Part shown: positions 3,712-61,600 of the stretch, piece by piece | Layout: the number at the start of each line of letters is the position of its first letter | How positions within the stretch are numbered: the stretch's first letter is position 1 | From: Heteronotia binoei | Lineage: Eukaryota | Length of the DNA stretch: 64,000 nt | NCBI RefSeq assembly: GCF_032191835.1 | Contig: NC_083234.1 | Span: forward strand, 51,212,001 to 51,276,000 | Direction: 5' to 3' | Notes under the pieces: generated by a model | Seen by the model: the letters and a program-made list of their open reading frames with translations, nothing else | Databases searched by the model: none | What the model was told of the DNA's origin: nothing | Made by a program: the position numbers and the translations under genes

Positions 3712-3888
3712 NNNNNNNNNNNNNNNNNNNNNNNNNNNNNNNNNNNNNNNNNNNNNNNNNNNNNNNNNNNNNNNNNNNNNNNNNNNNNNNNNNNNNNNNN
3801 NNNNNNNNNNNNNNNNNNNNNNNNNNNNNNNNNNNNNNNNNNNNNNNNNNNNNNNNNNNNNNNNNNNNNNNNNNNNNNNNNNNNNNNN
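3712..3888. other. Assembly gap (177 N) in NDUFA10 intron 2
   Basis: Run of N in the sequence; the right edge abuts a retroelement 3' tail. Confidence 1.
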
Positions 3889-5258: not shown

Positions 5259-5533
5259 TGATGATATTGGATTTATATCCCACCCCCACTCCGAATTTCA
5301 GAGTCTTAGAGTGTCGAACAATCTCCTATATCTTCTCCCCTCACAACAGACACTCTGTGAGGTGGGGGGGCTGAGAAGGCTCTCACAGCAGCTGCCCTTT
5401 CAAGGACAACTACTGTAAAAGCTATGGCTGACCCAAGGCCATTCCAGCAGGTGCAAGTGGAGGAGTGGGGAATCAAACCCGGTTCTCCCAGATAAGAGTC
5501 CGCACACTTAAACACTACACCAAACGGGCTCTC
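5259..5533 (-). mobile_element. Squam3-type tRNA-derived SINE
   Basis: On -: ggtgtagtg-ttaagtgtgcggactcttatctgggagaaccgggtttgattcccc head, cctcacagagtgtctgttgtg core, ataaatccaatatc tail. Near-identical copies occur elsewhere in the window. Confidence 0.85.
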
Positions 5534-5599
5534 CTGTACCAAACAGGATCTCTGTCGTCTGGGTACAGTAAAATCCGGAGAAAATCCAGGCCCCAACCT

Positions 5600-18712
<13,113 letters not shown>

Positions 18713-41500: not shown

Positions 41501-44500
41501 GGTGGGGGCTGGAGATCTGCCCCTTTTACAACTGATACCCTGGAGAAAATAACTGCCGAGGCCCTCCCCCTCCCCATGGCATTGTACTATGCTGAGTCTC
41601 CTCCCTTCCTCAAACCCCACTCTCTCCTGGATCCACCTCCAAAGTCTCCATGTATTTTTCAACACAGACCTGGCAAACCTAGTATCCTACCTTTCAATAA
41701 AATGAAGTCCAATTCAAGAACTTTGGTTTTCCATAGAAAAGAGCCTTCTGGGTAATTTCTTGGTGGTCAGCAGCAAAGAAAGGCATTAGAGGATGTGATT
41801 AAAGCTTTTTCCCAACTCATTGCTGTCCCTGCTGATGTTGGTGCTGCTATCCCTATGGGGTCCATATTGAGCTCAGATGAAACACCTGTCTAAGAAGTAG
41901 GCTACCAGGCACTGCCAGTTGTAATTTTAGTACAGCAATCAAGTAGGTCTTCTGAATAAGCCCCATGAGGTGGTGTTGCGAAAGCATGCAGCTGTGCTTA
42001 TGCACATCCTCAAGAACTTCCTGGTTTACTATTCCCATTGTATGTCCAAACCCAGAGAATGAAGAGCTCTCTAAAGATGCTGTTTGCTTTAGGTGAACTG
42101 ATCTGTATAGTCTGAAGACAGACTTGCCAATTCCAGGTTGAGAAATTTCTAGAGATTTGTGGTTAAGCCTGTGACGGTCAGAGTTTTGGGAGTGGAGGAA
42201 GCTTAACAGGGATATGATGACAGAGTCCATCCTCTATAATCTGGAGAACAGTTTGGTGCAGTGGTTAAGTGCGCGGACTCTTATCTGGGAGAACCGGATT
42301 TGATTTGCCACTCTATTTGCAGCTGCTGGAATGGCCTTGGTTCAACCATAGCTCTTGCCTGAGTTGTCCTTGGAAGGGGAGCTTCTGGGAGAGCTCTCTC
42401 AGCCCCACCCACCTCACAGGGTGTCTGTTGTGGGGGAGGAAGATAAAGGAGATTGTGACCTGCTGAGACTCAGAGTGGAGGGCGGGTTATAAATCCAATA
42501 TCTGCTTCATCATCTTCATCATCTTGAACTCCAGGCCACACCTTGAAGATGGTAACCTTAAATGTGGTCAGTACTCCAACAACATCCATCTCCTCCATCT
42601 GACACAAAATCTGCAATTTCAGTCTTCATTTAGTGCCTTGGAGTAGTGTTGAGCCAAAGAAGGGTGGGAAAAATTCAGATTTAATCCAGAAAAGATGGAG
42701 ATTTGGGTGGGTTTCCAGGAACAGGTTGTCCAGTTCTAGATGAGGTTGCACTTCCTCTAAAGGACTTTGTCCTCAGCTTGGGCCAGAATATGGTTTCTGG
42801 ATGCTCAGAAGGCAGCCATGGTCAAAAGCTCTTTTTCATCAGTTTAGGTTGATGTCCCATCTTAATTTGGAAATTATCATGTTCATGCTGCTGATCATGC
42901 CTTAGTAACCTCCAGATCACAATAATGTTGCACTCGTGACGTAGGATTCTCTTTGAACACTGCTCAGAATCTGACAGCCAGATCTAGCTCCCATTTAGTT
43001 CTAGGCACAATACCAAGTGCTGGATTTGACTCATAAAGGCCTAAATAGTTTGGGGATCAAGGACCTGAGAGTTCACCTGCTCCTGTCTGGACTTGCTTGA
43101 ATACTTGAGTCTTCATCTGAGGCCCTGATTTGTGTTCCACCATGACTGGAGGTTAGAGCAGCAAACACCAAAAGAACACCTATTTCACTCATCCCCTTCC
43201 CCATACCCTCCTCTTTTTCAAGGGAGAGTAATCTCCTTTCACAGACTGAATTTGCTGGTTTCTGATAGCCTGGAAGACGTGATGTGATGTGTGAGTAAGC
43301 TAGCTCTGCTTTTTCTTTTACATAATTTTTACATGTCACTGGTTTCACTGGTTGTCTGGTTTTATTAGGCTTTGAGGTCAAAGTGGAATACTTTAAGATT
43401 CCAATAAAGAACCAAAGGAAAATTTTGCTTTGCCACAAATTTACAAGGGGCCTTAGGATAGCATTATTCTTTCATCCTCAGCTTCAGTCACCTTGCTTTG
43501 CATTATGGGGTTCACAACAGCAACCTACATGTAAGGATTAATCATGCAACAAAAGCAAGGAGATAAAATATATTTCTTTGGACACCAAAGCTAAAGGTTA
43601 TTATTGCCATTATTTATGCTGCCTATTGATCCTTTGGCCAGTGGCTGAAGCACTTGACCATAAATCCTTCTTCAAGTACACACATTTCTGTCCACAGCCC
43701 ACTGTTAGTTATACAAGCCTTTTATTCTTCCAGCCCTGGCCAACAAGATCTCCATTCATCATCAATGTGCCAAAGGTCCTACATACTCGTGCAAGAACCT
43801 AATGACAGCTATCCAGTGTGGCACCTTGCAGCACTGCATACTGGCAGGTTGGAACCCGACCATCAATGTAAGTATCTGCAGGTCTCTTTCCCCACAAGTT
43901 CCTTCTCTCTTTCCATGGTTCAGCAGTTATAGAACAGTGTGAGAAAGGAGAGATCCTTGGAAAATCTGCCCTTGTGCTTAGTCACCAGGCAAGGGGCAAA
44001 AACAAAGGACTGCTGCTGGGAGGTACAATGGGTGCTTACTATTCAGATAGCTTTTCTGAGGGCCTAATTCCATGAGAAGAGCCCTGTGGTGCAGAGTGGT
44101 AAAGCTGCAGTACTGCAATCCTAAACTCTGCTCACAACCTGAGTTTGATTCCAGCGGAAGCTGGGTTCAGGTAGCCAGCTTGAGGTTGACTCAGCCTTCC
44201 ATCCTTCTGAGGTCAGTAAAATGAGTACCCAGCTTGCTGGGGGGAAAGTGTAGATGATTAGAGAAGGCAATGGCAAACCACCCCATAAAAAAGTCTGCCG
44301 TGAAAACGTTGTGAAAGCAGCTTCACCCCAGAGTCGGAAACGACTGGTGCTTGCACAGGGGACTACCTTTACCTTTATTTTAATTCCATTAGATGCTTTC
44401 CTGAAGTCTTAATTTACCATATTTATAGTCTACCTTTCTTGCTAATACTCAAGACAGATTACACCAATGAAATCAGTAGACATCTAATAAGCAGTGTAAT

Positions 44501-47500
44501 AGAGCCAGGACTGCAGAAATCTGAAACAAAGCATAGAGTATTTGACAAGATGTGTTAAACAATGGCAGCAAACGTAGAAGACAATGCAGTGAGAGTGGGA
44601 TAATGCATACCGCAAGCACATTTGTAAGTGTTCAGCAGTCTTCTGCATGAGAAAGGATGTATTCTGTACATAGTGCTACAGTTCACAGTCCCATTCCCAG
44701 TATAAAATACCTTCCAGAACCACTCTGTTATAATATAGTTGTATTACCTTGATAAAAATGCCATCCTGTGCAATTCTGTTTTACATAAATTGCAGAACAA
44801 CAAAAGCCCAGGAGCCTTCCTAATCTACTCAGTCAGGGCATTCCAAAGGGGGGGGGGGGGCACAATGCAGAATGTATAGGTATTAGCTGATCTTATTCAC
44901 TTGCAAAATGGTACCCTCAGGAGGCCATGCTCATATGAGTGAAGCTGTCATGGCGCCACATAGAAGAGATGGTCCTGCAGACTTGAGGGCCCAGAGCCAT
45001 GACGGGGCTTGTATATACCAATCTTTTTGCGTTGGGATTATGGTACAAAGGGAGAGTACGTTTAAGCATCTCCCCAACATTCTTTTCCTGACTTGAAGCA
45101 TCCCCAGGAGCTGCTGTTTGCTCCACTGGAGAAAATTAATTCATACCTCATCAATATGTATTCAATTTCCCCAATAGGGCAAATAGTGGCTCACAGGGCT
45201 GTTTCTCATCTGGAAAACTGCCCAAAGGGGTATGCTTAGGCCACCTCTACCTATGTGCCAAAGTCCCAATCCAAATTGTGCCCAGGTGACCTTGGATGCA
45301 CAGAGTATGTCTGTTGACCCCATCCATCAAGGGAAAGTGTATTGCATACTCCAGTTTGTGATGCCCCACTTGCTCTTGCCTCCTAGGATTCATGCACAGA
45401 CTGTGAACAGATTGTCAACATCCTCATCCGCATGGCCAAGGAGTCATCTTTTAAGGTAATGAAGACAACTAGGTAGTCCATGATCAATTTACTATAGATA
45501 ACCCCTCTTGTCTGCTTTTTGTCCCTGGCAAATCATTACTCCTGTTCTTGCCTTGGGGGTGGAGACATCTCCTTGAAATATTATTACTGAGGGCTGTTAG
45601 CATATTCTTTAACGAGCATTCAGCTCTCTTCTCCATGGGAAAGGATGCATCTGCCCCAGAACACATCCATGTGAATGCCTGCACCTGAATACTAAGGCTC
45701 CATGCTCATTATAAAGCCAGGCCACTTCTCACAGTGCAAGTATTTATATGTATTGTACAGCAATTATGGTTTTTTTTTCTAGTTCAGCTTTCAATAAAGG
45801 ACCCTCCCTTCTTGGTTAATTCCACTCCCCCCCATTTTTTGGGGGGGTGTGCCTGTGCCTAGAAGTCATGATGACCTTTGGTGACTCTTCCTGGGGGCAT
45901 GGAGGATGGTCAGATAAGTGGCTTCATAACCTGCCTCTGTCGCCCACTCCTGGTATTCTCTGGAGGTCTCCCATCCAAATACTTGCCAGATTCAGCCCTG
46001 CCTAGCTTCCAAAATCTGACAAGATCAGGTTTATCTGGGCTGTCCAGGCTACCTTCTTGGCTTTTGATTCAATGGAAGGCAGGGCATTGCAAAGTAAGAT
46101 GAATACAGCAGGTAACAAAATGTCTCCAGCAATGGTTAAGCAGGGCTCATTAAGCGATCCCTGAATGAGAGCTAGTTACATGCACAGCTTTATTTTCATT
46201 TGTGAAATATTGGACAGAAAAACTGTAAAGAGCTCTTGAAAGTCTTGATTTAAAATTCACAAAGTTTGGCCTATCAACAAACTGTAGGGAGAAGGCATTT
46301 CACAGACGAGATACCACAATCTTGAAGGCCCTGTCTTTTGCAGCCACCCACTGAGAATAAAAAAACTAGATCTCAGAGCTCAAGCAGTCTCATATGGGAA
46401 CAGGAGACCTTTGAGGTGCTTGATTCTAAACTGTTCAAGGCTTCAAAGGCAATGATAGGAACTTTGAATTGAGCTTGAAAAACACAACAGGCAACCAGTA
46501 AAGTTTTGTAAATACCAATCTAATGTGTTGCCCATAATCATCAGTGGCCAACAGTTTTGTTGCTGCATTTGGAACCAGTTTAAGTTTCCAAACCATTTTT
46601 AGTTTCATCCCAATGTGCAGTTTTTCTAAATGGTTACAGATCAGTGAAGGTACCTAAGATGGAGAATCCAGCGGAAAAACTGTCTCTGCAGAGTTCCCTC
46701 CCAGTCTCATTCCCTCTGCATCAATACTTCAGCTGTAATATACATCACCTGCTCTCTGAAGCGTCCAAGAGCCCCACCCTTTGTTTTTCTGCATGATACT
46801 TTGTTAAATCTAGGCAAGCCTGAGTCTAGTCAGTGCCTGGATGGGAGACTTCCTGGGAAACCCCCTCCTCCTACCCCATATACACATGTCACCTCAGCAT
46901 ATGAGTGGAAGGTGGAATTAAACCAATTATAAATGGCCTCTCCCTTAAAAGCGGAAGTCAGGAAAGTTCACAACTTACCTTTTTGCATAATTATCCTAAT
47001 GCCAAAATATGGGGTTTTCCAGTTCTTGACTGCCTTTTTGCTTGATGATTGCATGATGTTTAATCAATTAAACTGGCATATATCTTTATATACCTGGCCT
47101 TTAGCCGTGGGAGAAAGACAGGTATATATTTTTAAATAAATACATTTTAATTATGAACAGAATTATATTATTATTATTATTAAGGAAGAGGCATTCCTCG
47201 GTGGTTGTGGGAGGAATGCAACCCCAGTTTTTACAAATGCAGGAAACCATAGTAATCCAGCCAGTGTCGCACATCAGTGTACCCTCCAAACACCCTGTGA
47301 GTTGGAATGAGTGGTAGTAAAACAGATATCCCATAAGAGACAGTTCTCCCTCACCCTAAACTGACTCTCCTCAGGCATAAGAAGAGAGAAGTGGACAGAC
47401 ATCCCACGCCTTCTCATAATGCCTCCCTCCCTGCTAATTCCCACTGTTGTCCTCACAAAGGAGATCATCCGGAAGTACCTGGATCGTGAATGTACCACTT

Positions 47501-50500
47501 TGCCACTGCAGACGCTAGTCCCACGTTGCCAGACACTGGTGGATACATACTTAGACCTCTTCATCTCCAGCCTGGAAGGGCAGATTGTAAGTAGCCCCAG
47601 TTGGATCAGCTCTGCCACTAATCCTTCCTAGTGGTTTAGTAAGCAAGAAGCTGAGTCATAGTGGGGATGGCAGGGAAGGGGGAGAAAGGACAAGGTAGAA
47701 GTTGCTCTAGCATGAGAAAAAGTATGGAGGTGGAACAAGAGACAGACGTATCTGGACTGATCCGCTGTGAAGATCTCCTGTCCAAGGCTCATGGAAATGA
47801 ACTATTTGCTAGTGGTGCATGCAAGAGAACTTCCCTGAACAGTGTTGCCTCAAGGTCCAGCTTTGCAGCTGCTTCACTTACTTCTGGGTATGGCTGCCTG
47901 TGAAACAGGAATGGGTTATTCATTTGCTATCCTGGATTCTTGTGCCCTTCAGAAGCCCCTTTCTGTCTGCACAAAGTTGGGCCTCTGCCATTCCGAGCCA
48001 CTGGAGAGCAAGAACACCTTTGACATGCTGGTTCCAGTGGTGGAGCAGTTCTTTCAGCTACTACAAGGCAAAGCTCTCATCACACCCAACAGCCAGACCG
48101 AGGTAAGGACAGCTTCACTGTGCCAGATCTACATGGAGAACACATTTCTTCCCCTAAAGCTAATCTTAATCCTAAGAGGTGTGATATGGCCCCTTGGTCA
48201 GCGCTTTTGCTGCAGAAGTGTATTCCAAGGACTTTACCTGCCTGGAATTATCCACTGCACAAGAAATGCAATGGAGAAACAAGATGATGGATATCCTTTT
48301 GCCTACAACACAGGCAACAATTCCATTGGAGAGAAGGAGTCCAGTGGGCTCAGCAACAAAAAGTTAAGAGGGTGGGGAATGATACCCATCTGTGAGCCTG
48401 GCCTGAATGGAGCAAAACCCTCAGCCCAGATGGGATCAACAGGTCCAAAACCTTTCTGCTGCACAGTGAGCAATGCACTAAACATAGAGCTGCTTCAATT
48501 TGTCTCTTATTGCTTACACTTATTCCTTTTCCTAGGAAAATCCAGAGGAGGAGCTGCCCATCCCCCTGCCTCTTTGTTGGTTGTGCCGATCTTTTGTAGG
48601 CAGGGTTGAATCCTTGATCCCAAAGGTAAGAGAGCCATTTTCCTTCTTACAAAACAGGCACAAGCTGATGCAGAAGTGAGCAGCTGGAGCATCTAAGTTT
48701 TCTATTTTAAAACAACAACAAAGAAATTCTAACTTGACAGAGTGAATCTTGTGAATGTCTGTGGCACCTAGTAAAACCTTTCAGGGACCAAGGTGCCTGG
48801 ACTCCTTGTCTGTGGAAGAGGCAGGTGGCATCCTCCATCTCTTAGAGCAGAGATGAGGTTTCAGGACTCTGGCTAGTTCTCTGTGCATCATCCCCCTACA
48901 AATGCACACACACACACACACAAGCAGAAGCAGCAGAACAAAGTTAGAGTCCAGCAGCACCTTTAAAACCAACAAAGTTTTATTCAAGGTATGAGCTTTC
49001 TTTCGTGTGCATACATGCTTCTTCAGATCTAAGCAGAAGCAGTGTAATTCAAGCTAATGAAAGAGAGGCACAGGGGTCTTATTTATTCTTCATGCAGCAA
49101 TGAAATTGGTTCTAGCACACTGTCCCATCTGGTCAGGACACCCTGTGCTACGAAAGGAGGGTATGGTTAACTGTAGACCTCCCCATCATGCTGTCTAGAG
49201 ATATCTGAAGTTGCATGGAATAAGTTGTATGAAGACTTATAAATGGGGAAGGGACGAGGGCTCAGTGGTAGAGCATCTGCTTGGTAAGCAGAAGGTCCCA
49301 GGTTCAATCCCCAGCATCTCCAATTAACAAGGGTCCAGGCAAATAAGTGTGAAAAACCTCAGCTTGAGACCTTGGAGAGCCACTGCCAGTCGGAGTAGAC
49401 AATACTGACTTTGATGGACCGAGGGTCTGATTCAGTAGAAGGCAGCTTCATATGTTCATATTCAAGATGGGCCTCTGCCCACTGCTTGCAAAAGCATGAG
49501 GTTCTTTCTTTGCCTATGGCTACAACTGCAAAGTATAGGTTTCAGGCAACTTTGCAAGATCCAGTAGAGTTGCCAACTCCAGCTTGGCAAATTCCTGGAA
49601 ATATAAGAACAGTGCCTAAGGAGGATGGCGTTTGGGGAGGGGAGGGAACTCAGTAGAGATGTAATTCCATGGAGTCCACATTCTGCAACTGCCATTTCCT
49701 CCAGAGGAACTGATCTTGGTAGAACTCTGAACTCCAGGCCCCACCTGGAGTCTGGCAACCCTAGGGTCCAGGCAAGATCTCTGGATTTAGACCAGCTGGC
49801 AGGCCATACCAGTTAAAATGTCAAGCTTAAGACAGTGGCCCTACCTGCTAACTTTCACTAATGCTTGCTTTTTCTTCAGGCAGCAATTGCCAAAGTCCTG
49901 TCACAACTCTGCCGGATTCTGCCATTAGCCGTTGCTGGAATGTGCGAGTGTTTGATGGAGAAATATACCATGATCATTGTTGATTTGATCCTGGGCAAGC
50001 TGGGGCCACGGCTGATCTGTGGGATGATGCTCATGTGTGCCACAGAGGAAAACTGTGGTCCAGGTACAAGGCTAGTCAAGATGACTGCTTTCTGCTCCTG
50101 AACAACTCATTAGATAGCGTCAAACAATAATGTTACTGTCAGATTTAGTAATGTTTAACTAAGTATTGATTGTTTTTAAAATGTTAATCTTAATGTTTTA
50201 TTTATTGTATTGTTTATTTATGGATACTGTTAGCCGCCCTGAGCCTGCTTCGGCGGGGGAGGGCGGGATACAAATAAAATTTTACTTACTTAGGCATGCA
50301 TACATGCATGTTTCTCACCAGGCTGCTTCAAGCTAAGCGGAGACTCTACAACCAGCTTTCTCATTGCCTGTTGCACTGGCAATGCTGCCTAGGTCAGTGG
50401 TGTAGATATGGCAACAGGCATGCTTTATGCCTGTCCTCATGTTCCACACTTGCATGGCCACCAGCTGAGTCCAAGGTAAGTCCATGAGAGGTTGCCAATG

Positions 50501-53500
50501 CTGCTAGGAATTGGCTTGCTCCAAGAATCTCTGGCCAAGCACAACCTGTCCCCTTCCCCACTTGATCTGCCCACACATCAAGATCTAAACAGGTTGATCT
50601 TGCATTTATTTTCAGCACCTGGGCCAAAGAAGGTTGCCTGTGCCTGGAATAAGGTGTAATGACCTCCAGAGTGGCAGATGCAGAGTGGGAGGGGCTGCTT
50701 TAAACTGGCAGTAAATGCAAACAGAGAGAGAGATGTCCCCTAAGCAGCACCCAAGATGCCAGAGCTTCCAGAGGGAAAATGCCAGTGCCCGATACTTGAC
50801 TGCTCTGGCTGTAGGCCACATGGTTCTCTTCCTTCATCTCTCAAGCCCCACTACTGCCCTTCAGTTCTTGTGGACTGACTAGTTTTGAAAGAGAGGATAG
50901 TAAACATCTTGCCACTAGCCACAGGACATACTTTTTGCACTTTTCCTGCTTAGAGGTGTTTGCTAAGAAACCACCAAGTTCTTTAATCCTCCCCCCCCCC
51001 CCACCTCATGTCTATGAAATAGACAAAAATCATTGGCTGCAGCTGAACAGTAGGTAGTAACATGCCCTATGCAGCTAAGGACTTGGAAGAAATGCCCCAT
51101 TCAGTATAATGAGCAAATCAGTTTTTCAGCACAGAATTTTTAAATGCAGAATGATGTCTTCAAAGTAGCTGAAACAGGTTAGCTGTCGATGCTGAAATGC
51201 AGGTTGAGAGAATAAACAGTTTTGCTTTGAGTGGGTAATGTTCCAGCTTCCCTGCAAGTTACTACACATTATAGCTTCCTCTCACCAGAACTGTGTGTTT
51301 TCATAGAATCATAGAGTTGGAAGGTACCTCCAGGGTCATCTAGTCCAACCCCCTGCACAATGCAGGAAACTCACAAACACCTCCCCCTAAATTCACAGGA
51401 TCTTCATTGCTGTCAGATGGCCATCTAGCCTCTGTTTAAAAACCTCCAAGGAAGGAGAGCCCACCACCTCCCGAGAAAGCCTGTTCCACTGAGGAATCAC
51501 TCTAACAGTCAGGAAGTTCTTCCTAATGTTGAGCCAGAAATTCTTTTGATTTAATTTCAACCCATTGGTTCTGGTTCTGGTCCTGCCTTTCAGGATCACA
51601 GAAAACAATTCCACACCATCCTCTATATGACAGCCCTTCAAGTACTTGAAGATGGTGATCATATCACCTCTCAGCCACCTCATCTCCAGGCTAAACATCC
51701 CCAGCTCCTTCAACCTTTCCTCATAGGACTCGGTCTCCAGACCCCTCACCATCTTCGTCGCCCTCCTCTGGACCCGTTCCAGCTTGTCTATATCCTTCTT
51801 AAAATGTGGTGCCCAAAACTGAACATAATACTCCAGATGAGGTCTTACCAGAGCAGAGTAAAGCGATACCATCACATCATGTGATCAGGACACTATACTT
51901 CTGTTGATACAGCCCCAAATTGCATTTGCCTTTTTAGCCACCGCATCATACTGTTGACTCATGTTCAGCGTATGATCCACTAAGACTCCTAGATCCTTTT
52001 CGCACATACTACTGCTAAGACAAGTCTCCCCCATTCTATAACCATGCATTGGATTTTTCCTACTTAAATGCAGAACTTTACATTTATCCCTGTTAAAATT
52101 CATTTTATTGGTTTTAGCCCAGTTTTTCAGCCTGTCAAGGTCATCCTGTATCCTATTTCTGTCTTCTGTGTTTGCAAGCCCTCCCAATTTAGTATCATCT
52201 GCAAATTTAATAAGCATTCCCTCTATTCCTTCATCCAGATCATTGATAAAGATGCTGAACAAAACAGGTCCCAGGACAGATCCCTGAAGCACTCTACTTG
52301 TCACTCCTCTCCAAGAGGATGAGGAACCATTCACAAGCACTCTTTGGGTGCGATCTGTCAACCAGTTACAGATCCACCTAACGGTAACAGAATCCAAACC
52401 ACATTTTACCAACTTGTCAACAAGGATAGTATGGGGAACCTTATCAAAAGCCTTAATGAAATCAAGATAAACGATGTCTACAGCATTCCCCTGATCCAGC
52501 AAGGTAGTCACTTTCTCAAAAAGAGAGATCAGGTTAGTCTGACATGACTTGTTCTTGAGAAAACCATGCTGGCTCTTAGTAATCACATCCATTCTTTCTA
52601 AATGTTCCAGGATCAACTGTTTGATGATTTGTTCTAAAACTTTTCCAGGTATAGACATCAAGCTGACAAGTCGGTAGTTACCCGGATCCTTTTTTCCCCT
52701 TCTTGAAGATGGGGACAACATTTGCCCGCCTCCAATCTTCCGGCACCTCTCCTGTTCTCCAAGAATTTTCAAAAACAATAGCCAGAGGCTCAAAAATTAC
52801 ATCTGCAAGCTCTTTTAGAACCCTTGGATGCAATTCATCTGGCCCCGAGGACTTAGTTTCATTTAAAGAAACTAGGTGTTTATGTACTACACCCCTATGC
52901 TGATCCTAGGTTGGAACGTCATACCCTCCTTATATGTTCTGTTTTTGCCATGTTGAGCACCGTTCCCCTCAGAAGAGAAGACTGAGGAAAAGTAGGAATT
53001 GAGCAGTTCCGCCCTCTTTTCATTACCTGTTACAATTTAACTTTCTTGCCCTCGCAATGGGCCCACCGTGTCCTTGCTCTTTTTCTTATTCTGAACATAA
53101 GAAAAGAACCCTTTTTTGTTGTTTTTAGCATCTTAGGCCAGCCTAAGCTCATAATGAGCTTTAGTTTTCCTAACTTTCTCTACAAGCACTGGTGATTTGT
53201 TTATATTCATCCTTGGTTATAAGGCCCTCCTTCCAATTCCTAAAGGAGTCTTTTTTATTCCTCAAGTCTTTAGAGAGCTGTTTATGGAGCCACTTCAGCT
53301 TCTTTAGGCTTTTTCCTTTTTTTGTTCTCATTGAAATCGTCTGTGATTTTGCTTTCAGTATTTCGCTTTTGAGAAACTCCCACCCCTCCTGAACCCCCTT
53401 CCTCCTAAGTATTTCTGACCATGGGATTTTACCCAGCATAGTTCTAAGTTTATCAAAGTTTGCATTTCTGAAATTCAACCTATAAGTCTGACTATGTATA

Positions 53501-56500
53501 GCTTTTTCCTTCCCCTAAGACTGTAAATTCCAAAATCACATGGTCTCTACCGCCCAGGGTGCCCACTATTTCCACTTCTTCAATCAATTCTTCCTTGTTG
53601 GTGAGAATCAAATCCAAGATAGCAGATCCCCTTGTTTCCTTCTTCACTTTCTAGAAAAGGAAGTTGTCAGCAAGACAAGTCAGGAATCTATTTGACTTTT
53701 CATTTTTAGCAGAGTTGGACTTCCAACAGATGTCTGGGTAATTGAAATCTCCCATGATCACTGTATCCCTTCTCTTGGAGAACTTTGCAATCTGCTGTAG
53801 AAGTATCTCATCCAAGTCCTCTGCCAGACTTGGTGATCTATAGCAGACCCCCACAATAATATCACTGTTGTTTCTAACTCCTTTTATTTTTACCCAGAGA
53901 CTCTCAACTGAGCTGCCATGCTCTGATTCACATATTTCCTCACAAGTATATAACTCCTTCTTTCCACCGCAGAGATCAATACAGGGCCACTCCCTTGCCA
54001 AGCCTGCCTCACTGTCACCAGCCAGGTGAAGCTATCCATCAAGGCAAACAGTACCCAGATTGAAATAGAGGCAGCCTTCCTTAGCACATGCAGCAGCATC
54101 TATCCAGAATGGCAAGAAGAGGTAAGTGGCCAAAGAAGGGAGAGAGCAACCACTAGCCCAGGATCCTCTGCCCACCAAAGCCTGACAATTAACAGGAGAT
54201 GAAGCTGTTTCTGCTCAAGCAGTGTTTGAATTCAGCATGGAGAGACATAGTGGAATTTTAAGTGGGACAAGAGAAACTCCAGACAATGGTATGGGGGGAG
54301 AACCACACAACTGCTTTCCATGTTTTCAAGGTATTGCCATGCTGTGAAGATGCTATTGCTCCTACTCACAGCTCTAGCTGGCAGGTGCTTATTCATGAGA
54401 AGGCCTTGGCCTCTAGGCTCCATTTGTTGGCTCTCAAGGGGAACAAGTTAGTCACAGTATGAGAAAAGATGTTGATAGTCTGACCCACCAAGGCTGTTGT
54501 TCCTAGATAAGGCACAGCGAGGAGAGGAGGATCAGGTAGTTCTTGCCCAGTCAAGTGCCAGAGAGATCAAATATAACGGCCCACAAGTTGCCTAAAATCA
54601 ACATACAGACTGCTCAACATTACAAGATAATGTATTTTTCTTTTTAAGGGGAGCCAAGGTTCTGGGAAAAGAAATGGATATAGGGTTGGAGGCAGTCAGC
54701 TTTTCCTCTCAATTTCATCCAGTTCCTCTCCATACAACATACCCTCTCCCCCAAGGCTTTTGTACATGCAGTCCCATGATTCACAGTGTAGCATGGGTGG
54801 TCCAAGACCACTTCCTCCTGTTTTTGCTAGCAGAAAAGACTGTTGAATCCAACCTTTATACTAAAACCACTCCCTTACTCTTTTGCAGTGCAAAAGTTTT
54901 GTCCACCAGGACCAGTCGAAGTTGGCCATCCTGCTTGCAAAACCATGGAGCTCCAAGAGAACATGCCAGGTATGCTAGGCCTGTCCACAACAGATGACAT
55001 CATTCCAGTGCCTCTGCTTAACTGTAAATTCAGCTCTGATACTAGTGAAGATCACAACACAGAGTCTGCAAAGCATCCATAGTTTTCTTAAGTGTATTTA
55101 AGTAGCAACAAGGAGTTCAGTGGGCAGGTGCAGGCACACAGTGTGAAATTTCTCTTAATAAAACCAGCTCTGTAGAGCTTGGCTGGTTCTGGTTTTGGTT
55201 CTGGTTCTGAGAACCGATCTGGTTCTCAGCAGCCTCTGTATTGTCAAACCACATTCAGTTCCACTCTCTGCTCAATTTGCGGCATTTTTTCACTGACTTT
55301 CTCTATTAAGTATCAAAGGAAATGGACAAGCCAAGTCAGGAAAAGGTCAGTTACAAAAGCCCCCAATTTGTGAAGCAATCCAGGAGAATAAGACTAAGCC
55401 AGGGGTGGCCAAACTGCGGCTTGGGAGCCACATGTGGCTCTTTCACATATATTGTGTGACTCTTGAAGCCCCAACCACCCTGTCAGTCAGCATGGAGAAG
55501 GCATTTCTCTCTTTAAATCACTGCTCCAAACCAAGCCAACTGACGACGTGGAGAGTGCATTTAAAGTTGCTTTCTCCATCCCCATCTAGTTGCCTTCCTG
55601 TCTTCCAGCTCTTAAACATCTGGCATTCATGTCGTGTGGCTCTCGAACATCTGACATTTATTCTATGTGGCTCTTACATTAAACAAGTTTGGCCACTCCT
55701 GGACTAAGCAATGCAAAAGAGTAAAGCTCTGAATAAATGCTACTAGAACTCCTGCATTATGATCATGTAGATCTCAGCCCCTGGGGATCATCAGCAACCA
55801 GCAGAAAGGAGAAACATTTCACGCTATTAACCACAAAAGTCACCTCATAGGGCATGGATACCCCAGAGTGGCATGATTTGGCTTAGGAAGGCAGTTCCAG
55901 TGTACAAGGCAAAAGGACTATTATTTCCACAAAGGCATAGGATCCCACTGACTTCTCTTCCTCCTCTTCGTTCTTTCTTTGCTAACAGGAACTGGGTGCC
56001 TGTGTGGCTGAGGAGGGAGAGTTTCCAGGAGACAAAGCATGTGCCCAGGGTCCTACTTACTGGTGCTCCAACTTGAGTGCTGCTGAGGAATGTAAGGTAA
56101 GAACTGCATCTGTTTTGTGGGCAAGCAATGTCTTAAGACAGCTGTGGCAAAGGCAAAACCACCACTGGCTGCCAAGATCATGAGGCACATGGCAGTTAAA
56201 CTCATAACCTGATCCTAGAAGGGCAGGTCCAGCTCAGGTTCTGTGGACACCATGCCTCTCACCTCTCTTCCTCCTAAGGCAGGGGTGGCCAAACTACAGC
56301 TTGGAAGCCACATGTGGCTCTTTCACACATATTGTGTGGCTCTTGACACCCCCACCACTCTGTCGGCTAGCTGGGAGAAGGCATTTCTCTCCAAGCCAAG
56401 CCAGCTGGTGACTTGGAAAATGCATTTAAAGTTGCTTTCTTTCTACCTCTACTTCTCCTATCTGTCTGCCTGCTTGCCTTCCTTCCAGCTCTCAAACATC

Positions 56501-57020
56501 TGATTACAATAAAATATTCTCAGTCTAGAAGTGCTACTAAAGAGACTGGGAAGACTAGAGCTGGCATGCCATCCCAGTTAAAATTGTCAGGCTACTCTGA
56601 GACAAATGGGTTTGAATCTCTGCTATACTGTGGAAACTCACTGCGTGACCCTGGGTCCATTGCAATCTTTCAGCATAGCCTACCTTACAAAGTGTTGTTG
56701 TGAGAATAAAGAAGAGGAGAGAGAATGATGCAGTAAACCACCTTTGGTCTCAATCAGGTAGCAAAGTGAAATTTAAAAACAGAGCTGGGCCTCTAGGCTA
56801 GGGCACATGGAGCCAAATGAGTGAATTTCAGCAGGCTTTACTACTGACCTACACCTTTGAATGGCCACATTGCAAAAATCAAGCTAGAAGTGGACAAGTA
56901 TTAGAAGTACCTCCACAGATTGTAGCCCCCATCACCCTTTGAGCTGGATGCAATTTCTCCCGCTTTCTCATTATTCTCTCCTAGGCTGTGCAACACTGCC
57001 AGGCTCACGTATGGCTGTAG
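38545..57020 (+). CDS. SFTPB: Pulmonary surfactant protein B precursor, 389 aa (SapA-SapB-SapB-SapB-SapA)
   Basis: Exons 38545-38587, 43734-43867, 45387-45455, 47461-47586, 47953-48102, 48536-48625, 49880-50063, 53973-54121, 54889-54969, 55989-56096, 56985-57020 (1170 nt, in frame). Signal peptide [15 protein letters not shown]. Mature SP-B region [79 protein letters not shown] aligns without gaps to human FPIPLPYCWLCR... Convergent with USP39 as in human. Exon 1 is assigned from TATA, signal peptide and phase, so it is slightly less certain. Confidence 0.93.
38706..38917. mobile_element. hAT-like MITE (TAGGGTTGCCA TIR family)
   Basis: taggggtgccag...ctggcaacccta termini; internal sequence shared with 40104-40362, 41483-41681 and 49565-49763. 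Confidence 0.75.
40104..40362. mobile_element. hAT-like MITE (TAGGGTTGCCA TIR family)
   Basis: agggttgccaacctccaggtgg...ctggcaacca termini. Confidence 0.75.
41022..41075 (-). mobile_element. CR1 3' tail fragment
   Basis: cacagaatcattgagttggaagggatccccagggtcatctagtcc matches the CR1 end at 51302. Confidence 0.7.
41225..41450 (-). mobile_element. Older Squam3/MIR-like SINE
   Basis: ccctgtg...gtcaggctgagagagactgact...gatttgaacc...cctaaccactgc on +, the reverse of a SINE head and core. Confidence 0.6.
41483..41681. mobile_element. hAT-like MITE (TAGGGTTGCCA TIR family)
   Basis: TIRs tagggttacca...tggcaaaccta; 8-bp TSD gtatccca/gtatccta supports the hAT superfamily. Confidence 0.8.
42241..42525 (+). 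mobile_element. Squam3-type SINE
   Basis: Same family as 5259-5533 in the opposite orientation; ends ataaatccaatatc-(TTC/ATC)n. Confidence 0.85.
42700..43105 (+). mobile_element. Decayed L2 fragment
   Basis: Recognisable degenerate L2 ORF2 nucleotide blocks (ccttagtaacctccaga, cataaaggcctaaatagtttgggg) with many stops. Confidence 0.5.
44075..44376 (+). mobile_element. Sauria SINE (Squam1)
   Basis: gttgactcagccttccatccttctgaggtcagtaaaatgagtacccagc core, BovB-like gaaggcaatggcaaaccacc block, (accttt)n tail. Confidence 0.85.
45860..46050 (-). mobile_element. 5S rRNA-derived SINE
   Basis: ggtctcccatccaaatacttgccagattcagccctgcctagcttcc is the reverse complement of the 5S internal control region. 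Confidence 0.6.
48925..49030. mobile_element. Penelope-like element end fragment
   Basis: Same motif as 32628-32740, ending gcttcttcagat. Confidence 0.55.
49245..49460 (+). mobile_element. Squam2 tRNA-derived SINE
   Basis: A box gggctcagtgg and B box ggttcaatcc, then gagagccactgccagtc...gtagacaatactga...gatggacc...aggcagcttcatatgttc. Confidence 0.85.
49565..49763. mobile_element. hAT-like MITE (TAGGGTTGCCA TIR family)
   Basis: tagagttgccaac...ctggcaacccta termini; flanks agatccag/gggtccag are a partial TSD. Confidence 0.75.
50120..50285 (+). mobile_element. L2 3' UTR fragment
   Basis: gttagccgccctgagcctgcttcggcggggagggcgggatacaaataaaa is near-identical to the end of 2435-2975. Confidence 0.8.
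51302..53959 (-). mobile_element. CR1 LINE, 5'-truncated ORF2 (endonuclease C-half plus RT), disrupted
   Basis: ORF pieces on -: [10 protein letters not shown]...GVCYRSP...[11 protein letters not shown] (APE endonuclease), [52 protein letters not shown] (RT), [12 protein letters not shown]. 3' (ATTCTATG)n-type end at 51302. Several stops and frameshifts. Confidence 0.96.
55400..55701. mobile_element. hAT-Charlie-like MITE
   Basis: TIRs caggggtggccaaac...gtttggccactcctg with a perfect 8-bp TSD gactaagc (55392-55399, 55702-55709). Confidence 0.88.
56280..56502. mobile_element. hAT-Charlie-like MITE, truncated
   Basis: Left TIR caggggtggccaaac and an interior matching 55400-55701; right end missing. 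Confidence 0.75.
56605..56770 (+). mobile_element. Older Squam3/MIR-like SINE
   Basis: gggtttgaatc head, cagcatagcctaccttacaaagtgttgttgtgag core. Confidence 0.55.
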
Positions 57021-57149
57021 CCAGATAAGAAACCAGACATCATCGGGTGCTGTGACAAGTTCCTGCCATCTGACCTAGTCATTTGGATTCTTCCTGCTTA
57101 TTGATCACTGATGGGAGGCAGGATGTAAGAGGACTGTATACTCTTGAAT

Positions 57150-57155
57150 ATTAAA
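57150..57155 (+). terminator. SFTPB candidate polyadenylation signal
   Basis: ATTAAA 130 nt after the stop codon. Confidence 0.4.
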
Positions 57156-58267
57156 ACTCATTTCAACACAGTACTGCACTGACTTTCATCCTTGAACTAT
57201 AAATGAGAACTGCATACTATGAAGTAACTCCTTCTTTCTTCATGCTCACAGATTATGGCATGAGGGATATTGAGCAGGCTGGATTATTAGACTGCTCACA
57301 ATGGAAGGAAAGGAATGGCAGAAAGTTCTAGGGAAGATGTAGGGAAAAAGCAAGGGCTATACGATGGAGCTGGATCCCATTTAAATTCCCTGCATGCAAG
57401 TGTAACTTCCCCATGTGTCCCCCCTTTTACTGTTGCATGAAATATCCCTGAAGTGCAAAGAATCCCACCCCCCAGAAGCAGCATAAAGAGGGAGGATGTC
57501 ACAGCAGTGAGACCAGCAGCAAAAATCACCTCTCTCCTTACACATGAGGACACTTTCCATGAGACTGAACCCAATATCATCCTGCATCTGAACATGGTAA
57601 AGCTTCTTTTTTAAGGTAACTCCTTGCCTGAAAAGGTTTGGACAGCTGCCCTCTCAATATTGGCATAACTTCAAAGCATGGTGAGATCCATTCTACCACT
57701 ATTCCAAAAGGTGGAGGGAATCCTTGAAGGGCTCATTGTACAAACAAGAATGACATGGCTAGGCTTGGAGAACAAATATGTAATTCAGTGAGCCTAAGAA
57801 TTCCTGCTCTCCATTAGGAACAGTCTAGCTTTGATTTCCCACACTGTATGGGGAGCTGGATTAGATGGCCTATTAGGCTCTTTTTGCTGGAATGCCAGGC
57901 TATGCCTGAACACCAGCACAAAAGGGCTGGGTATCCACTAGTTAGAACAATAAATGCATGCCTTCTTCCATTAGGGGCAGCTTGAGGAAAAGGGAAGAGA
58001 AACACAGTTTTCATGGCTGTCATTGTCTAGCTGACCGCCTCTGTTGTAGCAGCTCACAAGTGAACATTATCTAGTCTTAGAATGCTAAATAGTTGTGGTT
58101 AGCATTACCACTCATGATAGTTCATAAGCTAGAGTTTGTAGCTTAACACTCATCGACTTAAAGCAGAAATAGCTAAATTAAATGGAACTCTCTAGTCTAC
58201 AACATTCCTATGCAATTTCTAGAAAAATCAATTGTTTAAAGAAGGACAATGTTAAAAATAATGTACA

Positions 58268-58656: not shown

Positions 58657-61600
58657 TCAAGCTCCTTGCTGGTTGGTCTCCTCTTCATTATCTCTTCTCT
58701 TCCAGATCTACAGAAATAAACCAAACCTTATTCTAGTTTGGTGGCATATTCTGAAGCCACAGTGGCTCTCTTTGACTGTATGCAAAACTGCACCAGCAGA
58801 GCAATTCTAAAAACACTTTCCTGAAGTAATCCCCAATGAATAGATCTGACTAGGAATCTCAAACCTGTTTGGGAGATTTATAGTGTAATCCTAATCAAAA
58901 TGGCATGACATGCAGATTAAATTCAGACTATTTGATTAGTTTGTACACTGCATCCCAACAGCATTTTTAAAGGGCTGATCAGAATTTGGATTGTGTAGGA
59001 AATATGGTGGGGAGCATACACACAGGGAAATTACATGTACATACTGAATTACCAGCTACCCTGGCCATCCTCTGAAACCCAAGGCCAAGGATCCCTGTCT
59101 CTCAACGCAAGGAGGTCAGCAGTTGATTTCAGTCAGTGCTTCAGGTAGGGGAACCACCTCTGCCTGCAGGCAGGTCCCAGCACTCACCTGAATGTAAGCC
59201 TCGGAGAGTGTGATCATCTGGGGGAGAATGTCTGTCACCTGCAAGTCTTGCAGCTCATACCATTTGCCCGTGCCCTGCCAAAGCCATAACACAAGGAATG
59301 AGGGTAAGATATGAGCCAGCAAGGTTATTTGTGTGCAAAGACGACATTATGGCACAAGTAGTCACTCTGTCAAGCATGGAATCTGGTCCTGACACAGCAG
59401 CACTACTTCATCACATAGGACAAGTTGAGGAAAGGCCTTTAAAAAGCAGCTGAGGGCCACACAATGGGCCTAGGAAACAAAAAGGAGGTGAACTGCTTTG
59501 AGAGGGCAGTGTGCTCACACACACAATGTGCTTATACTGCCTCTGGGAAAACAGCAACCGGAACTGCTTGAATCACCACTTCTGAATGCAGGACACAGTA
59601 AGAGCAAGCCTGAGCCAACTCACATGGTGCAACACATGGATCCTGTATGCCCCTTCAGCTGGCTTCCCATCATGCACTATGTTTGCGATGAGATCATAGG
59701 TTGTATTCTTATGCACAGCCTGTACTTCCTCAGAGAGGTATTCCCGGAGATCCACATTCCTGTAGCAGAAAAAGAAGGACTGTGTTTTACCTGCTCTGCA
59801 ACAATAACACATTGCAACTTCGGTTCCCATACACAGAATACCATAAATCTGCATCTTTGGTAAGTCTCCCTTCTGGTGAGTGCCCCTGCCATACACACAC
59901 ACACAGAAGATGATGATGATAATGGATTTATATCCCACCCTTCGCTCTGAATCTCAGAGTGGTCACAATCTCTTTTACCTTCCTCCCCCACAGTAAACAC
60001 CCTGTGAGGTAGGTGGGGCTGCGAGAACTCTCACAGAAGCTGCCCTTTCAAGGACAAACTCCTGCAAGAGCTATGGCTGACCCAAGGCCATTCCAGAAGC
60101 TGCAAGTGGAGGAGTGGGGAATCAAACCTGGTTCTCCCTGATAAGAGTCCACACACTTAACCACTGTTCTTGCGTTTTTGCAAGAAGTAGTGACAGCAGT
60201 GAGATGCTGCTAGCACCATCTTCAGAATCCCCATGTGCAGAATTTTAAACACTTTGAATACGACTCCTGATCAGTGCTCCCTCTAAGCTGATAGTGTGAG
60301 CTAGCTCACAGGTTCTTAGCCTCTAGATCACGCATTTTTGTCAGCTCAGAAAGGATGGCCCCAGAGCAGTTTCCGGGTTATGTCGCCTTGAGCTCAGTGG
60401 GGGTCCGCAGAGCTTGTCTCTAGCACCCCCCCTGAATCAGGCAGTTGGAGAGGTGCCACAGACGTGGCATCTCCAGGGAGACTCTGAAGGGGTTTCCTTT
60501 TGGCATGGGGCTTTGCAAGAAGCCAAGGGCATAGCGGCGGCTATTCCTGTCCTTGTATGCCCCGAAGCTCCGCCGCCATGATCGCCATTACGGCAATAAG
60601 AGGTGAACACCTGACCGCTTGCCCTTTTTTTTCTTAACAAGCTTCTGATGCATCGCTTTGCTACCTCAAGCATGGCAATTCTGCTCAGCAAGTAAGTTTG
60701 TTTTCAATACCACTGGCTAATGGGTCATTTTACATAACAACAAACGGGACAGTTCAAAGGAAGGGAAAGAGGTGGATTCCCCCCCCCTTTCCCGTGAATG
60801 CAGTTTCAAAAAGACGAAGAACAACTTTGAGCATTGGCAACAATTTGAATTAGACTGATTATAGATACTCAAATTGACCCGCATTATAATTGAATATGTG
60901 TTAATGAGACTATTATCTGGTTATAATATGGTCTGAACAAAAACGAGATATATTTTAGAGAGATTTGTCTTTGCCACCTGAGTACAACTGAAATGGCAAA
61001 TCAAAACACATGGCTGAAGGAGATTTGGAGAGGCAGACTAACTGGGTCTCTGAGTTACTTTTCAACTTGGACTAATAGACTGAGTTATTTGGTAGAGAAA
61101 AATGGCATTACTGAGCGAAATGTTTTATAAAAAAGATATAATGGTTACCATAACTTCTCTAAAGCAAGATCTTGGTTTATTATCAGAGTTGATAAAAAAG
61201 CAAATGGGAGCTTTTATGTTGAAAGCTAGCGAAATCTCAAATTTACATGAGCAGAGTGTTAAAGAGATCTCGGTGACGTCTGTGGAATTGGAAATGGAGA
61301 GTGATCCGCTGGGAAACGAACAGAAGAAAACCAAAATGGAACCTTATTGCGCAGTTAAAAAGAAGGACCAGAAATTGAGACTGATTGAAGTTTTTTCGAG
61401 AAGAACAAGTGGCGTGGGATCCTTACTATTTTTACTGAGAGGGATGACTGCACTAAGGAGAGAGAAGGTACATCTCAGCAAAAAAATCAAGATGTGGAAA
61501 ACTTTCAGGAAAAAGGGCCTTTGAACTGTTTCTCTCTCTGTGGGTAATTGGATATGGAATTCTCAACAAAAACTGACATGCGATTTTAAAAGGCCAAATG

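What the first reader, a model, noticed from the sequence alone, without database searches (positions are those of the whole stretch)
51281..53972. CR1 insertion 13 nt from the SFTPB exon 8 acceptor appears to donate the branch point
Seen: CR1 homology (KELYTCEE...) stops at about 53959, leaving only ctttccaccgcag before exon 8. Removing the 2.66 kb element gives ...ctcAccagaactgtgtgtttt|ctttccaccgcag, with a yTnAy branch A (51284) 30 nt from the exon. In the present allele the antisense CR1 supplies ctcAc with its A (53942) also 30 nt from the exon, plus extra pyrimidines. Inference: an insertion that should have broken splicing of an essential lung gene was tolerated by exapting endonuclease-coding DNA as a branch point. 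This is the second such case in the window. No clear TSD is visible, so the junction is approximate.
Basis: partly seen in the sequence, partly recalled or inferred. Interest (0 to 1): 0.7.

Follow-up and report, generated by a model that had tools for sequence, protein, structure and literature searches.

The report
CR1 insertion beside SFTPB exon 8
In Bynoe's gecko, a 2.66 kb jumping gene landed 10-13 bases before an exon of the lung surfactant gene SFTPB, so that exon's splicing signals must now come from the inserted DNA; this is a well-documented but ordinary case of a tolerated insertion, and no RNA data were available to test it.

Summary
The window is Heteronotia binoei (100% identical to GCA_032191835.1). 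An antisense, 5'-truncated, decayed CR1 LINE (51301 to about 53959) carries an endonuclease remnant, a reverse transcriptase and a TTCTATGA tail. It sits in SFTPB intron 7 and ends 10-13 nt before the exon 8 acceptor (AG 53971-72).

Three other geckos (Paroedura, Sphaerodactylus, Eublepharis) and Phrynosoma have the empty site. In the geckos the two flanks abut to within 2-3 nt, and a conserved ctcAcc lies 28 nt before the same acceptor. In Heteronotia that block now lies 2.66 kb upstream.

If exon 8 is spliced as annotated, the branch point must therefore lie in CR1-derived DNA. Six of the 12 bases of the pyrimidine run also come from the CR1 side. This follows from geometry and was not measured.

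Which adenine is used is unknown. A53942 (ctcAc, -31) and A53953 (ataAc, -20) are both plausible.

The motif is no more than chance would give: 21-52% of all possible truncation points of this CR1 would leave usable-looking signals.

The scan has noted similar near-acceptor insertions elsewhere in this genome (REEP4, SEMA4B, an olfactory receptor gene). I rate it a new member of a known kind, of modest interest.

The parts
49880..50063 (+). SFTPB exon 7 (second half of the mature SP-B-like saposin domain). Donor gt at 50064-65.
   Evidence: tblastn of SFTPB orthologues; sequence read; protein alignment.
50064..53972 (+). SFTPB intron 7, 3909 nt, of which about 2659 nt are the CR1.
   Evidence: The same intron is about 940 nt in Phrynosoma.
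51270..51300 (+). Orphaned ancestral 3' splice-site block: cttcctctcAccagaactgtgtgttt, with the branch-site candidate at A51284. It is conserved in all four geckos and now lies 2.66 kb from the acceptor.
   Evidence: Alignment A4. It is the only perfect yUnAy within 60 nt of the acceptor in Sphaerodactylus, Eublepharis and Paroedura, always at -28.
51301..53959 (-). 5'-truncated, decayed CR1 LINE, antisense to SFTPB. The 3' end is at 51301. The 5' end is solid to 53952, probable to 53959 and ambiguous up to 53962.
   Evidence: Pfam endonuclease and RT hits; relatives L001/L002; at least 5 frame changes and 2 stops; absent from orthologous sites.
51301..51316 (-). CR1 terminal octamer repeats (CTCTATGA TTCTATGA on the minus strand).
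   Evidence: a second CR1 tail at 41023 starts at the same base; octamer definition TTCTRTGA in PMC2612034.
51885..52793 (-). CR1 reverse-transcriptase remnant (302-codon open stretch).
   Evidence: PF00078, E 2.2e-31.
53651..53959 (-). CR1 endonuclease remnant. The element starts in the middle of this domain (…KELYTCEEI…).
   Evidence: PF14529, E 6.4e-8; 69-72% identical protein fragments P0001 and P0002.
53938..53943 (+). Branch-site candidate 1: cctcAc, A53942 at -31. It is followed 3 nt later by AG 53945-46, the same layout as the ancestral ctcAccAG. It is CR1-derived: the reverse complement of GTGAGG in the TCEE codons, present in both relatives.
53949..53954 (+). Branch-site candidate 2: tataAc, A53953 at -20. 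It lies at the uncertain CR1 5' junction; the relatives read tatatt here.
53954..53965 (+). Uninterrupted 12-nt pyrimidine run, ctccttctttcc. Its first 6 nt are on the CR1 or junction side and its last 6 nt are native.
   Evidence: longest Y run is 12 here and 9 in the three empty-site geckos.
53960..53972 (+). Native remainder of the intron, ctttccaccgcag, with acceptor AG at 53971-72. Two or three of its T's may be a short target-site duplication.
   Evidence: Alignments with the empty sites.
53973..54121 (+). SFTPB exon 8, 149 nt, phase 1 to 0. It begins the C-terminal saposin-like domain of proSP-B. Donor gt at 54122-23.
   Evidence: SapB_1, E 6e-6; 100% match to P0045; conserved boundary; coordinates.

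Best explanation
After the Heteronotia lineage split from Paroedura, a CR1 LINE retrotransposed in antisense orientation into the 3' splice-site region of SFTPB intron 7. It landed between the conserved ancestral branch-site/pyrimidine block (cttcctctcAcc…gtgttt) and the last 10-13 nt before the acceptor.

Shown:
- The ancestral block is now 2.66 kb upstream.
- The same acceptor and reading phase are kept.
- The gene is otherwise intact.

Inferred: U2 snRNP now pairs with a branch site inside the CR1's antisense endonuclease-coding remnant, somewhere in 53940-53955. A53942 (ctcAc) or A53953 (ataAc) is most likely. U2AF would bind a pyrimidine tract that is half CR1-side and half native.

The insertion probably survived because this particular truncation point happened to bring an AG-poor, pyrimidine-rich stretch with degenerate branch motifs. 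That is survivorship among many insertions rather than a special adaptation.
For: - Identity of the window and gene.
- CR1 domains and tail.
- 5' limit of the CR1 against relatives.
- Contiguous empty sites in three geckos, and no CR1 in Phrynosoma.
- Conserved ctcAcc at -28 in all empty-site geckos.
- The acceptor position and phase are conserved, and the annotated H. binoei protein uses it.
- The 13 native bases hold no usable adenine, and the nearest upstream AG is at 53945-46. This confines a branch that would select AG 53971-72 to about 53940-53955.
- The pyrimidine tract is not weakened. It has a 12-nt Y run against 9, and 15 of 20 pyrimidines against 12-14 of 20.
- Chance control: 21-52% of truncation points are compatible.
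- CR1 decay (at least 5 frame changes and 2 stops) argues for long residence.
Against: - No transcript evidence.
- The branch point is not mapped.
- Upstream yUnAy motifs at -43 and -47 would select AG 53945-46 and add 26 nt, a frameshift, so some mis-splicing is possible.
- The antisense CR1 adds about 17 acceptor-like sites and one good donor-like site at 52532, so pseudo-exon use cannot be excluded.
- The 5' junction is uncertain by about 7-10 nt.
Confidence: 0.8

Rival explanations
1. The insertion allele is splicing-defective or leaky. Exon 8 would be skipped or mis-spliced from this allele, and the animal would rely on an empty second haplotype, on low residual correct splicing, or on a truncated proprotein.
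For: - No RNA data.
- Competing signals exist: yUnAy at -43 and -47 with AG 53945-46, and many acceptor-like sites in the CR1.
- In mice, a proSP-B lacking the C-terminal part still improved survival (Akinbi 1997, as cited in PMC8798122).
Against: - The CR1 carries at least 5 frame changes and 2 stops, so it has been resident for a long time and is not a fresh deleterious polymorphism.
- All SFTPB exons downstream of the insertion are intact, and the protein is 81-83% identical to other geckos.
- Skipping the 149-nt exon would shift the frame.
- The local pyrimidine tract is at least as good as the ancestral one.
Confidence: 0.08
2. Variant of the junction. The element ends at about 53951, and 53952-53964 (aactccttctttc) is a diverged 13-nt target-site duplication of aactgtgtgtttt (51289-51301). 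The native or duplicated DNA would then reach 21 nt upstream. The -20 branch candidate would straddle the CR1/duplication junction, and G-to-pyrimidine changes in the duplicate would have improved the tract.
For: - blastn homology to the relatives stops at 53952.
- aact is shared, and 8 of 13 positions match the left flank.
- The reconstructed length fits Paroedura to within 1 nt.
- All three G's of the left copy are pyrimidines in the right copy.
Against: - 53953-53959 also matches the CR1 relatives at 4 of 7 positions, a match about as good as the duplication model's.
- Five differences in 13 nt are more than expected for a duplicate younger than the Paroedura split, while the left copy is unchanged.
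- Only two related CR1 copies were available.
Confidence: 0.15
3. The ancestral branch site at 51284 is still used across the 2.66 kb CR1 (a distant branch point), so the CR1 contributes nothing.
For: The block 51270-51300 is still identical to Paroedura at 29 of 30 positions.
Against: - Known distant branch points need an AG-free zone up to the acceptor (established knowledge of AG exclusion zones).
- This stretch holds many AGs and about 17 acceptor-like sites.
- The first AG after the old branch is now catAG at 51305-06, supplied by the CR1 tail.
- Conservation of a 30-nt block is also expected if the insertion is not very old.
Confidence: 0.02
4. Assembly artefact: the CR1 was placed in the intron by mis-assembly.
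For: None specific.
Against: - Both junctions are clean and fall at one point of the orthologous sequence, with the element's true 3' terminus at one side.
- The public chromosome-level record has the same sequence.
Confidence: 0.02

Closest known systems
Canine merle allele: SINE inserted in reverse orientation at the PMEL intron 10 / exon 11 boundary (PMC7349775)
   Same: A retroelement sits in antisense orientation inside the branch-site-to-acceptor interval of a coding exon. Element-derived pyrimidines act as the tract, and the original acceptor can still be used.
   Different: Merle is a SINE whose poly(T) length tunes a switch to a cryptic acceptor and gives a phenotype. Here the element is a 2.66 kb LINE fragment without a poly(T), apparently old and probably fixed. 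The original branch site is far out of reach, and no phenotype or RNA data exist.
Polymorphic Alu insertions within 100 bp of exons (Payer et al. 2019, PMC6326789)
   Same: Insertions are depleted near exons but not absent. Position alone does not predict a splicing effect, and some insertions in the branch-site/pyrimidine zone leave exon use unchanged.
   Different: Those are young human polymorphisms tested in minigenes. This is an old insertion in a gecko, closer to the AG (10-13 nt) than most, and untested.
Antisense Alu/SINE exonization, where element sequence supplies the pyrimidine tract and acceptor (summarised in PMC7349775)
   Same: Antisense retroelement DNA is pyrimidine-rich and readily provides 3' splice-site signals. 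One search gave 21% compatible truncation points for the antisense strand against 7% for the sense strand.
   Different: Exonization creates a new exon. Here the element only replaces the upstream signals of an existing, conserved, constitutive exon.
Other near-acceptor insertions noted by this scan in the same genome (s1-322688 REEP4 SINE, s1-335886 SEMA4B L1, s1-333683 Penelope near an olfactory receptor gene)
   Same: They are lineage-specific retroelements within a few bases of a splice acceptor of an apparently intact gene.
   Different: The element classes and rescue routes differ (a target-site duplication recreating the acceptor; a pyrimidine tract donated by a SINE). None was checked here.

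Membership tests
CR1 clade non-LTR retrotransposon (LINE) | ORF2 with an APE-type endonuclease followed by a reverse transcriptase | tested here: met
   PF14529/PF03372 on 53651-53971(-) and PF00078 on 51885-52793(-), in that order on the minus strand.
CR1 clade non-LTR retrotransposon (LINE) | 3' end made of 1-4 copies of the octamer ATTCTRTG / TTCTRTGA, with no poly(A) | tested here: met
   The minus strand ends ...CTCTATGA TTCTATGA at 51301; definition from PMC2612034.
CR1 clade non-LTR retrotransposon (LINE) | 5' truncation, with short or no target-site duplication | tested here: met
   The element begins inside the endonuclease domain. The flanks overlap the empty sites by 0-3 nt. A longer diverged duplication is not excluded.
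CR1 clade non-LTR retrotransposon (LINE) | The RT groups with CR1 rather than L2, Rex1 or RTE in a phylogeny | not tested
   Only the nearest protein hits were seen: CR1-like endonuclease fragments and one from a bird, Turdus. No tree was built.
Lineage-specific insertion with an orthologous empty site | The flanks are contiguous in related species at the same point | tested here: met
   Paroedura, Sphaerodactylus and Eublepharis: left flank to 51300-51302, right flank from 53961-53963, adjacent in each orthologue. Phrynosoma intron 7 is only about 940 nt.
Transposable-element-derived splice signal (exapted branch site / pyrimidine tract) | Element-derived DNA occupies the branch-site and tract positions of an acceptor | tested here: met
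   The CR1 reaches to 10-21 nt from the AG, and positions -14 to -2672 are CR1.
Transposable-element-derived splice signal (exapted branch site / pyrimidine tract) | The acceptor is used in mature mRNA | tested here: inconclusive
   The annotated protein P0045 joins exon 7 to 53973, and the boundary is conserved.
Transposable-element-derived splice signal (exapted branch site / pyrimidine tract) | The branch point maps inside the element | not testable with these tools
   This needs lariat reads or primer extension. Only motif candidates are available.
Transposable-element-derived splice signal (exapted branch site / pyrimidine tract) | Evidence of selection or adaptation on the donated signal | tested here: not met
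   ctcAc is ancestral to the CR1 family, being present in L002. Compatible contexts arise at 21-52% of truncation points.

The most novel reading that the evidence does not exclude
The insertion forced a complete turnover of the branch site of a constitutive exon in a gene needed for breathing, and was followed by compensatory changes next to the acceptor. On this reading, the three G-to-pyrimidine differences and the new TAAC at 53951-54 arose after insertion, in a duplicated target site. That would make this locus a datable natural experiment on how 3' splice sites are rebuilt.
Probability: 0.12. Interest if true: 0.55.

Novelty: new member of a known kind. Interest (0 to 1): 0.33.

Why it matters
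The locus gives an unusually clean before-and-after comparison. The ancestral branch-site block is conserved across roughly the whole gecko radiation, and the insertion point is known to within 3 nt. The exon cannot be skipped without a frameshift.

If lung RNA confirms normal splicing, the locus shows how little sequence the vertebrate spliceosome needs upstream of an acceptor. It also helps explain why retroelement exclusion zones near exons are leaky, especially for antisense, pyrimidine-rich LINE fragments.

Beyond that it is an ordinary tolerated insertion. It changes no annotation of SFTPB and reveals no new mechanism.

Tried and rejected

(2) Other CR1 copies in the window. There is only a 52-nt tail at 41023-41074, which helped fix the 3' end but not the 5' end.

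(3) A protein alignment with a bird CR1 (P0003) suggested that CR1 homology runs through 'CGG' into the acceptor itself. I rejected this. The closer DNA relatives show that the window's LY is the IY of KNIYTCEE, so the match to GGVALY is not collinear without an extra deletion.

(4) My first idea was that exon 8 is 150 nt and that skipping it would stay in frame. Recounting gives 149 nt, so I dropped it.

(5) Closer relatives than Paroedura. None were in the protein collection. P0019 and P0042 had no contig on record; isoform P0069 worked.

(6) The big representative search with the exon 8 peptide mostly returned multi-saposin proteins. Only P0013 and P0019 were useful.

(7) PDB search with exon 7 gave saposin and SP-B hits but did not settle the limits of the mature peptide.

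(9) MaxEnt-type splice scores were not available; only crude motif counts were used.
Full report
**What the window is.** Positions 43000-57520 are 100% identical to Heteronotia binoei chromosome record CM063336.1 of GCA_032191835.1. The gene is SFTPB. The exon 8 peptide, searched by reference, found SFTPB-type proteins. A word search then named them in turtles, lizards and snakes. The annotated H. binoei SFTPB protein P0045 matches most of the exons in the window at 100% and the rest at 95-98%, apart from one over-extended local match.

The exons found on the + strand are:
- about 43733-43879
- 45387-45455
- 47458-47592
- 47953-48102
- 48536-48628
- 49880-50063 (exon 7)
- 53973-54121 (exon 8)
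- about 54886-54975
- 55986-56096

**The element.** The minus strand of 51301-53959 reads, in order:
- an endonuclease remnant (PF14529 E 6e-8; PF03372 weaker)
- a linker
- a reverse transcriptase (PF00078 E 2e-31)
- a C-terminal region and a short 3' UTR
- the octamers CTCTATGA-TTCTATGA

That octamer tail is the hallmark of CR1 (PMC2612034). That paper also shows that the terminal A belongs to the element, which puts the 3' end at 51301. A second CR1 tail in the window (41023-41074) starts at the same base. The copy is dead: the open stretches change frame at least five times and there are at least two in-frame stops.

**Where the element ends near the exon.** A word search with the open frame 53651-54001(-) found two close fragments (P0001 and P0002, 69-72% identical) and a bird CR1-like fragment. 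The contigs of the two close ones (L001, L002) extend further 5' in the element. DNA alignment and blastn show solid homology up to window 53952. Four of the next seven bases match, up to 53959, and nothing matches beyond.

An apparent protein match of 'CGG..LY' to the bird GGGVALY motif would have carried the CR1 into the AG itself. It is not collinear with the closer relatives, and I rejected it.

**Empty sites.** I fetched orthologous SFTPB loci through their annotated proteins:
- Phrynosoma platyrhinos (L003)
- Eublepharis macularius (L004)
- Paroedura picta (L006)
- Sphaerodactylus townsendi (L007)

In all three geckos, intron 7 aligns with the window on both sides of the CR1, and the two alignments abut:

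| Species | Left flank: window ↔ locus | Right flank: window ↔ locus |
|---|---|---|
| Eublepharis (L004) | 51300 ↔ 13461 | 53963 ↔ 13463 |
| Sphaerodactylus (L007) | 51300 ↔ 14127 | 53963 ↔ 14129 |
| Paroedura (L006) | 51302 ↔ 11963 | 53961 ↔ 11961 |

The sequences at the site read as follows:
- Paroedura: cttcctctcaccagaaccgtgtgttttcccatggcag|AGATC
- Sphaerodactylus: cttcctctcaccagaactgtttgtttctccactacag|AGATC
- Eublepharis: cttcccctcaccagaactgcgtgtttctccaccacag|AGATG
- Heteronotia: cttcctctcaccagaactgtgtgttt[CR1]ctttccaccgcag|AGATC

The insertion is therefore specific to the Heteronotia lineage after its split from Paroedura; both belong to Gekkonidae. Heteronotia has 2-3 extra T's at the join. 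These could be a tiny target-site duplication or slippage. A diverged 13-nt duplication (aact…) cannot be excluded and is listed as a variant.

Phrynosoma has a 940-nt intron without the element. It uses the same acceptor phase, G|AA ATC against G|AG ATC. The protein alignment shows 'CGPE|I/M/F..G.L.C' in all five geckos, so the acceptor itself did not move.

**Splice signals before and after.** In the three empty-site geckos, the only perfect yUnAy within 60 nt of the acceptor is ctcAcc, with its A at -28 (adenine to first exon base). It is followed 3 nt later by an AG that is too close to be used. Then comes a G-containing pyrimidine tract with 12-14 pyrimidines in 20 and a longest run of 9. 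That block is the best conserved part of the intron.

In Heteronotia the block lies 2.66 kb upstream. The sequence now in front of the acceptor is ...gctctgAttcAcatatttcctcAcaagtatataActccttctttccaccgcag. Its features are:
- perfect yUnAy at -31 (A53942), -43 and -47
- aUaAc at -20 (A53953)
- the nearest upstream AG at 53945-46
- 15 of 20 pyrimidines, with a 12-nt run at 53954-53965

The 13 native bases contain one adenine, 7 nt from the exon. That is too close for a branch, by established knowledge of branch-to-acceptor spacing. A branch at -43 or -47 would meet AG 53945-46 first.

A branch that selects AG 53971-72 must therefore lie at about 53940-53955, which is CR1-derived or junction DNA. 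This is an inference from geometry and standard scanning rules, not a measurement. The ctcAc is the reverse complement of GTGAG in the TCEE codons and is present in relative L002. It came with the element and was not made afterwards. The TAAC of candidate 2 differs from both relatives, which read tatatt, but it lies in the uncertain junction.

**Is it more than chance?** I slid the junction over every possible 5' truncation point of this same antisense CR1 and applied three requirements:
- a branch motif at -18 to -40
- no AG more than 10 nt after it
- at least 65% pyrimidines after it

Of all truncation points, 21% (strict yUnAy) to 52% (U at -2 plus one flanking pyrimidine) pass. The same DNA in sense orientation passes at 7-24%. 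Shuffles of the antisense CR1 pass at 28-55%.

A usable-looking context is therefore a common outcome for an antisense CR1, and the resemblance of ctcAcaAG to the ancestral ctcAccAG is not statistically remarkable. The likely story is survivorship: an insertion that happened to bring adequate, degenerate signals was not removed.

**Stakes for the gene.** Exon 8 is 149 nt, so skipping it, or using the +26 nt AG, shifts the frame downstream of the mature SP-B region. Exon 8 starts the C-terminal saposin-like domain (SapB_1). In mice a truncated proSP-B improved the survival of SP-B-deficient animals, and the C-terminal part mattered for surfactant formation (Akinbi 1997, as summarised in PMC8798122).

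The downstream exons are intact, and the protein is 81-83% identical to those of other geckos. Together with the decay of the CR1, this argues that the allele has long been compatible with function. The antisense CR1 also adds about 17 acceptor-like sites and a good donor-like site at 52532. In addition, the CR1 tail puts catAG 22 nt after the orphaned ancestral branch site. Some aberrant splicing is therefore a fair prediction.

**What could not be done.** The N run at 3712-3888 was not touched.

**Comparison with what is known.** Retroelements are depleted within about 100 bp of exons, but not absolutely, and position alone does not predict the effect on splicing (PMC6326789). The canine merle SINE sits in reverse orientation at the PMEL intron 10/exon 11 boundary. 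There, element-derived pyrimidines serve as the tract between the branch site and the original acceptor (PMC7349775).

The scan's own notes list three more near-acceptor insertions in this gecko genome. I did not check them.

This locus is a well-documented new example of that known kind. It is notable for three things: its closeness to the AG, the complete displacement of a conserved branch-site block, and the clean set of empty sites.

**Verdict.** Novelty: new member of a known kind. Interest is modest.

Noticed in passing
window 41023-41074: A second short CR1 3' tail in the same orientation, 88% identical to 51302-53353's first 52 nt (that is, to 51302-51353), lying in an upstream SFTPB-region intron. 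It starts at the same terminal base (T|CAYAGAAT).
   Followed up: partly
window 51284-51323: The orphaned ancestral branch site and tract are now followed by catAG (51305-06) and atAGAG from the CR1 octamer tail, and by a donor-like aag|gtacct at 51323. This is a possible decoy 3' splice site or 17-nt micro-exon.
   Followed up: no
window 52239-52532: Inside the antisense CR1 there is a strong acceptor-like site (cctctattccttcatccag|, 14 of 16 pyrimidines) and the best donor-like site of the element (cag|gttagt, 8 of 9), 294 nt apart. This is a candidate pseudo-exon.
   Followed up: no
window 5318-5538, 8541-8765, 26223-26453, 42249-42471 (inverted), 59961-60187: At least five copies of one tRNA-related-looking SINE family (65-94% identical).
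   Followed up: no
L001 and L002 (ENA assembly ERZ27276729, contigs k141_45855 and k141_31091): Two short contigs of a metagenome-type assembly carry CR1 endonuclease sequence. They are 92% identical to each other and 78-79% identical to the gecko copy. This is presumably reptile host DNA in that sample; the source organism is unknown.
   Followed up: no
L003 (Phrynosoma platyrhinos CM034702.1) 3001-3219: The annotated Phrynosoma 'SFTPB' protein P0013 has an odd glutamate-rich N-terminus and lacks the SapA and first saposin exons. This is probably a mis-predicted first exon in that annotation.
   Followed up: no
window 55394-55706, 56274-56471 and 32174-32449 (inverted): A repeated segment of about 120-300 nt occurs twice in tandem-like spacing (880 nt apart) downstream of exon 9, and once inverted at about 32.2 kb. 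It is an unclassified repeat.
   Followed up: no
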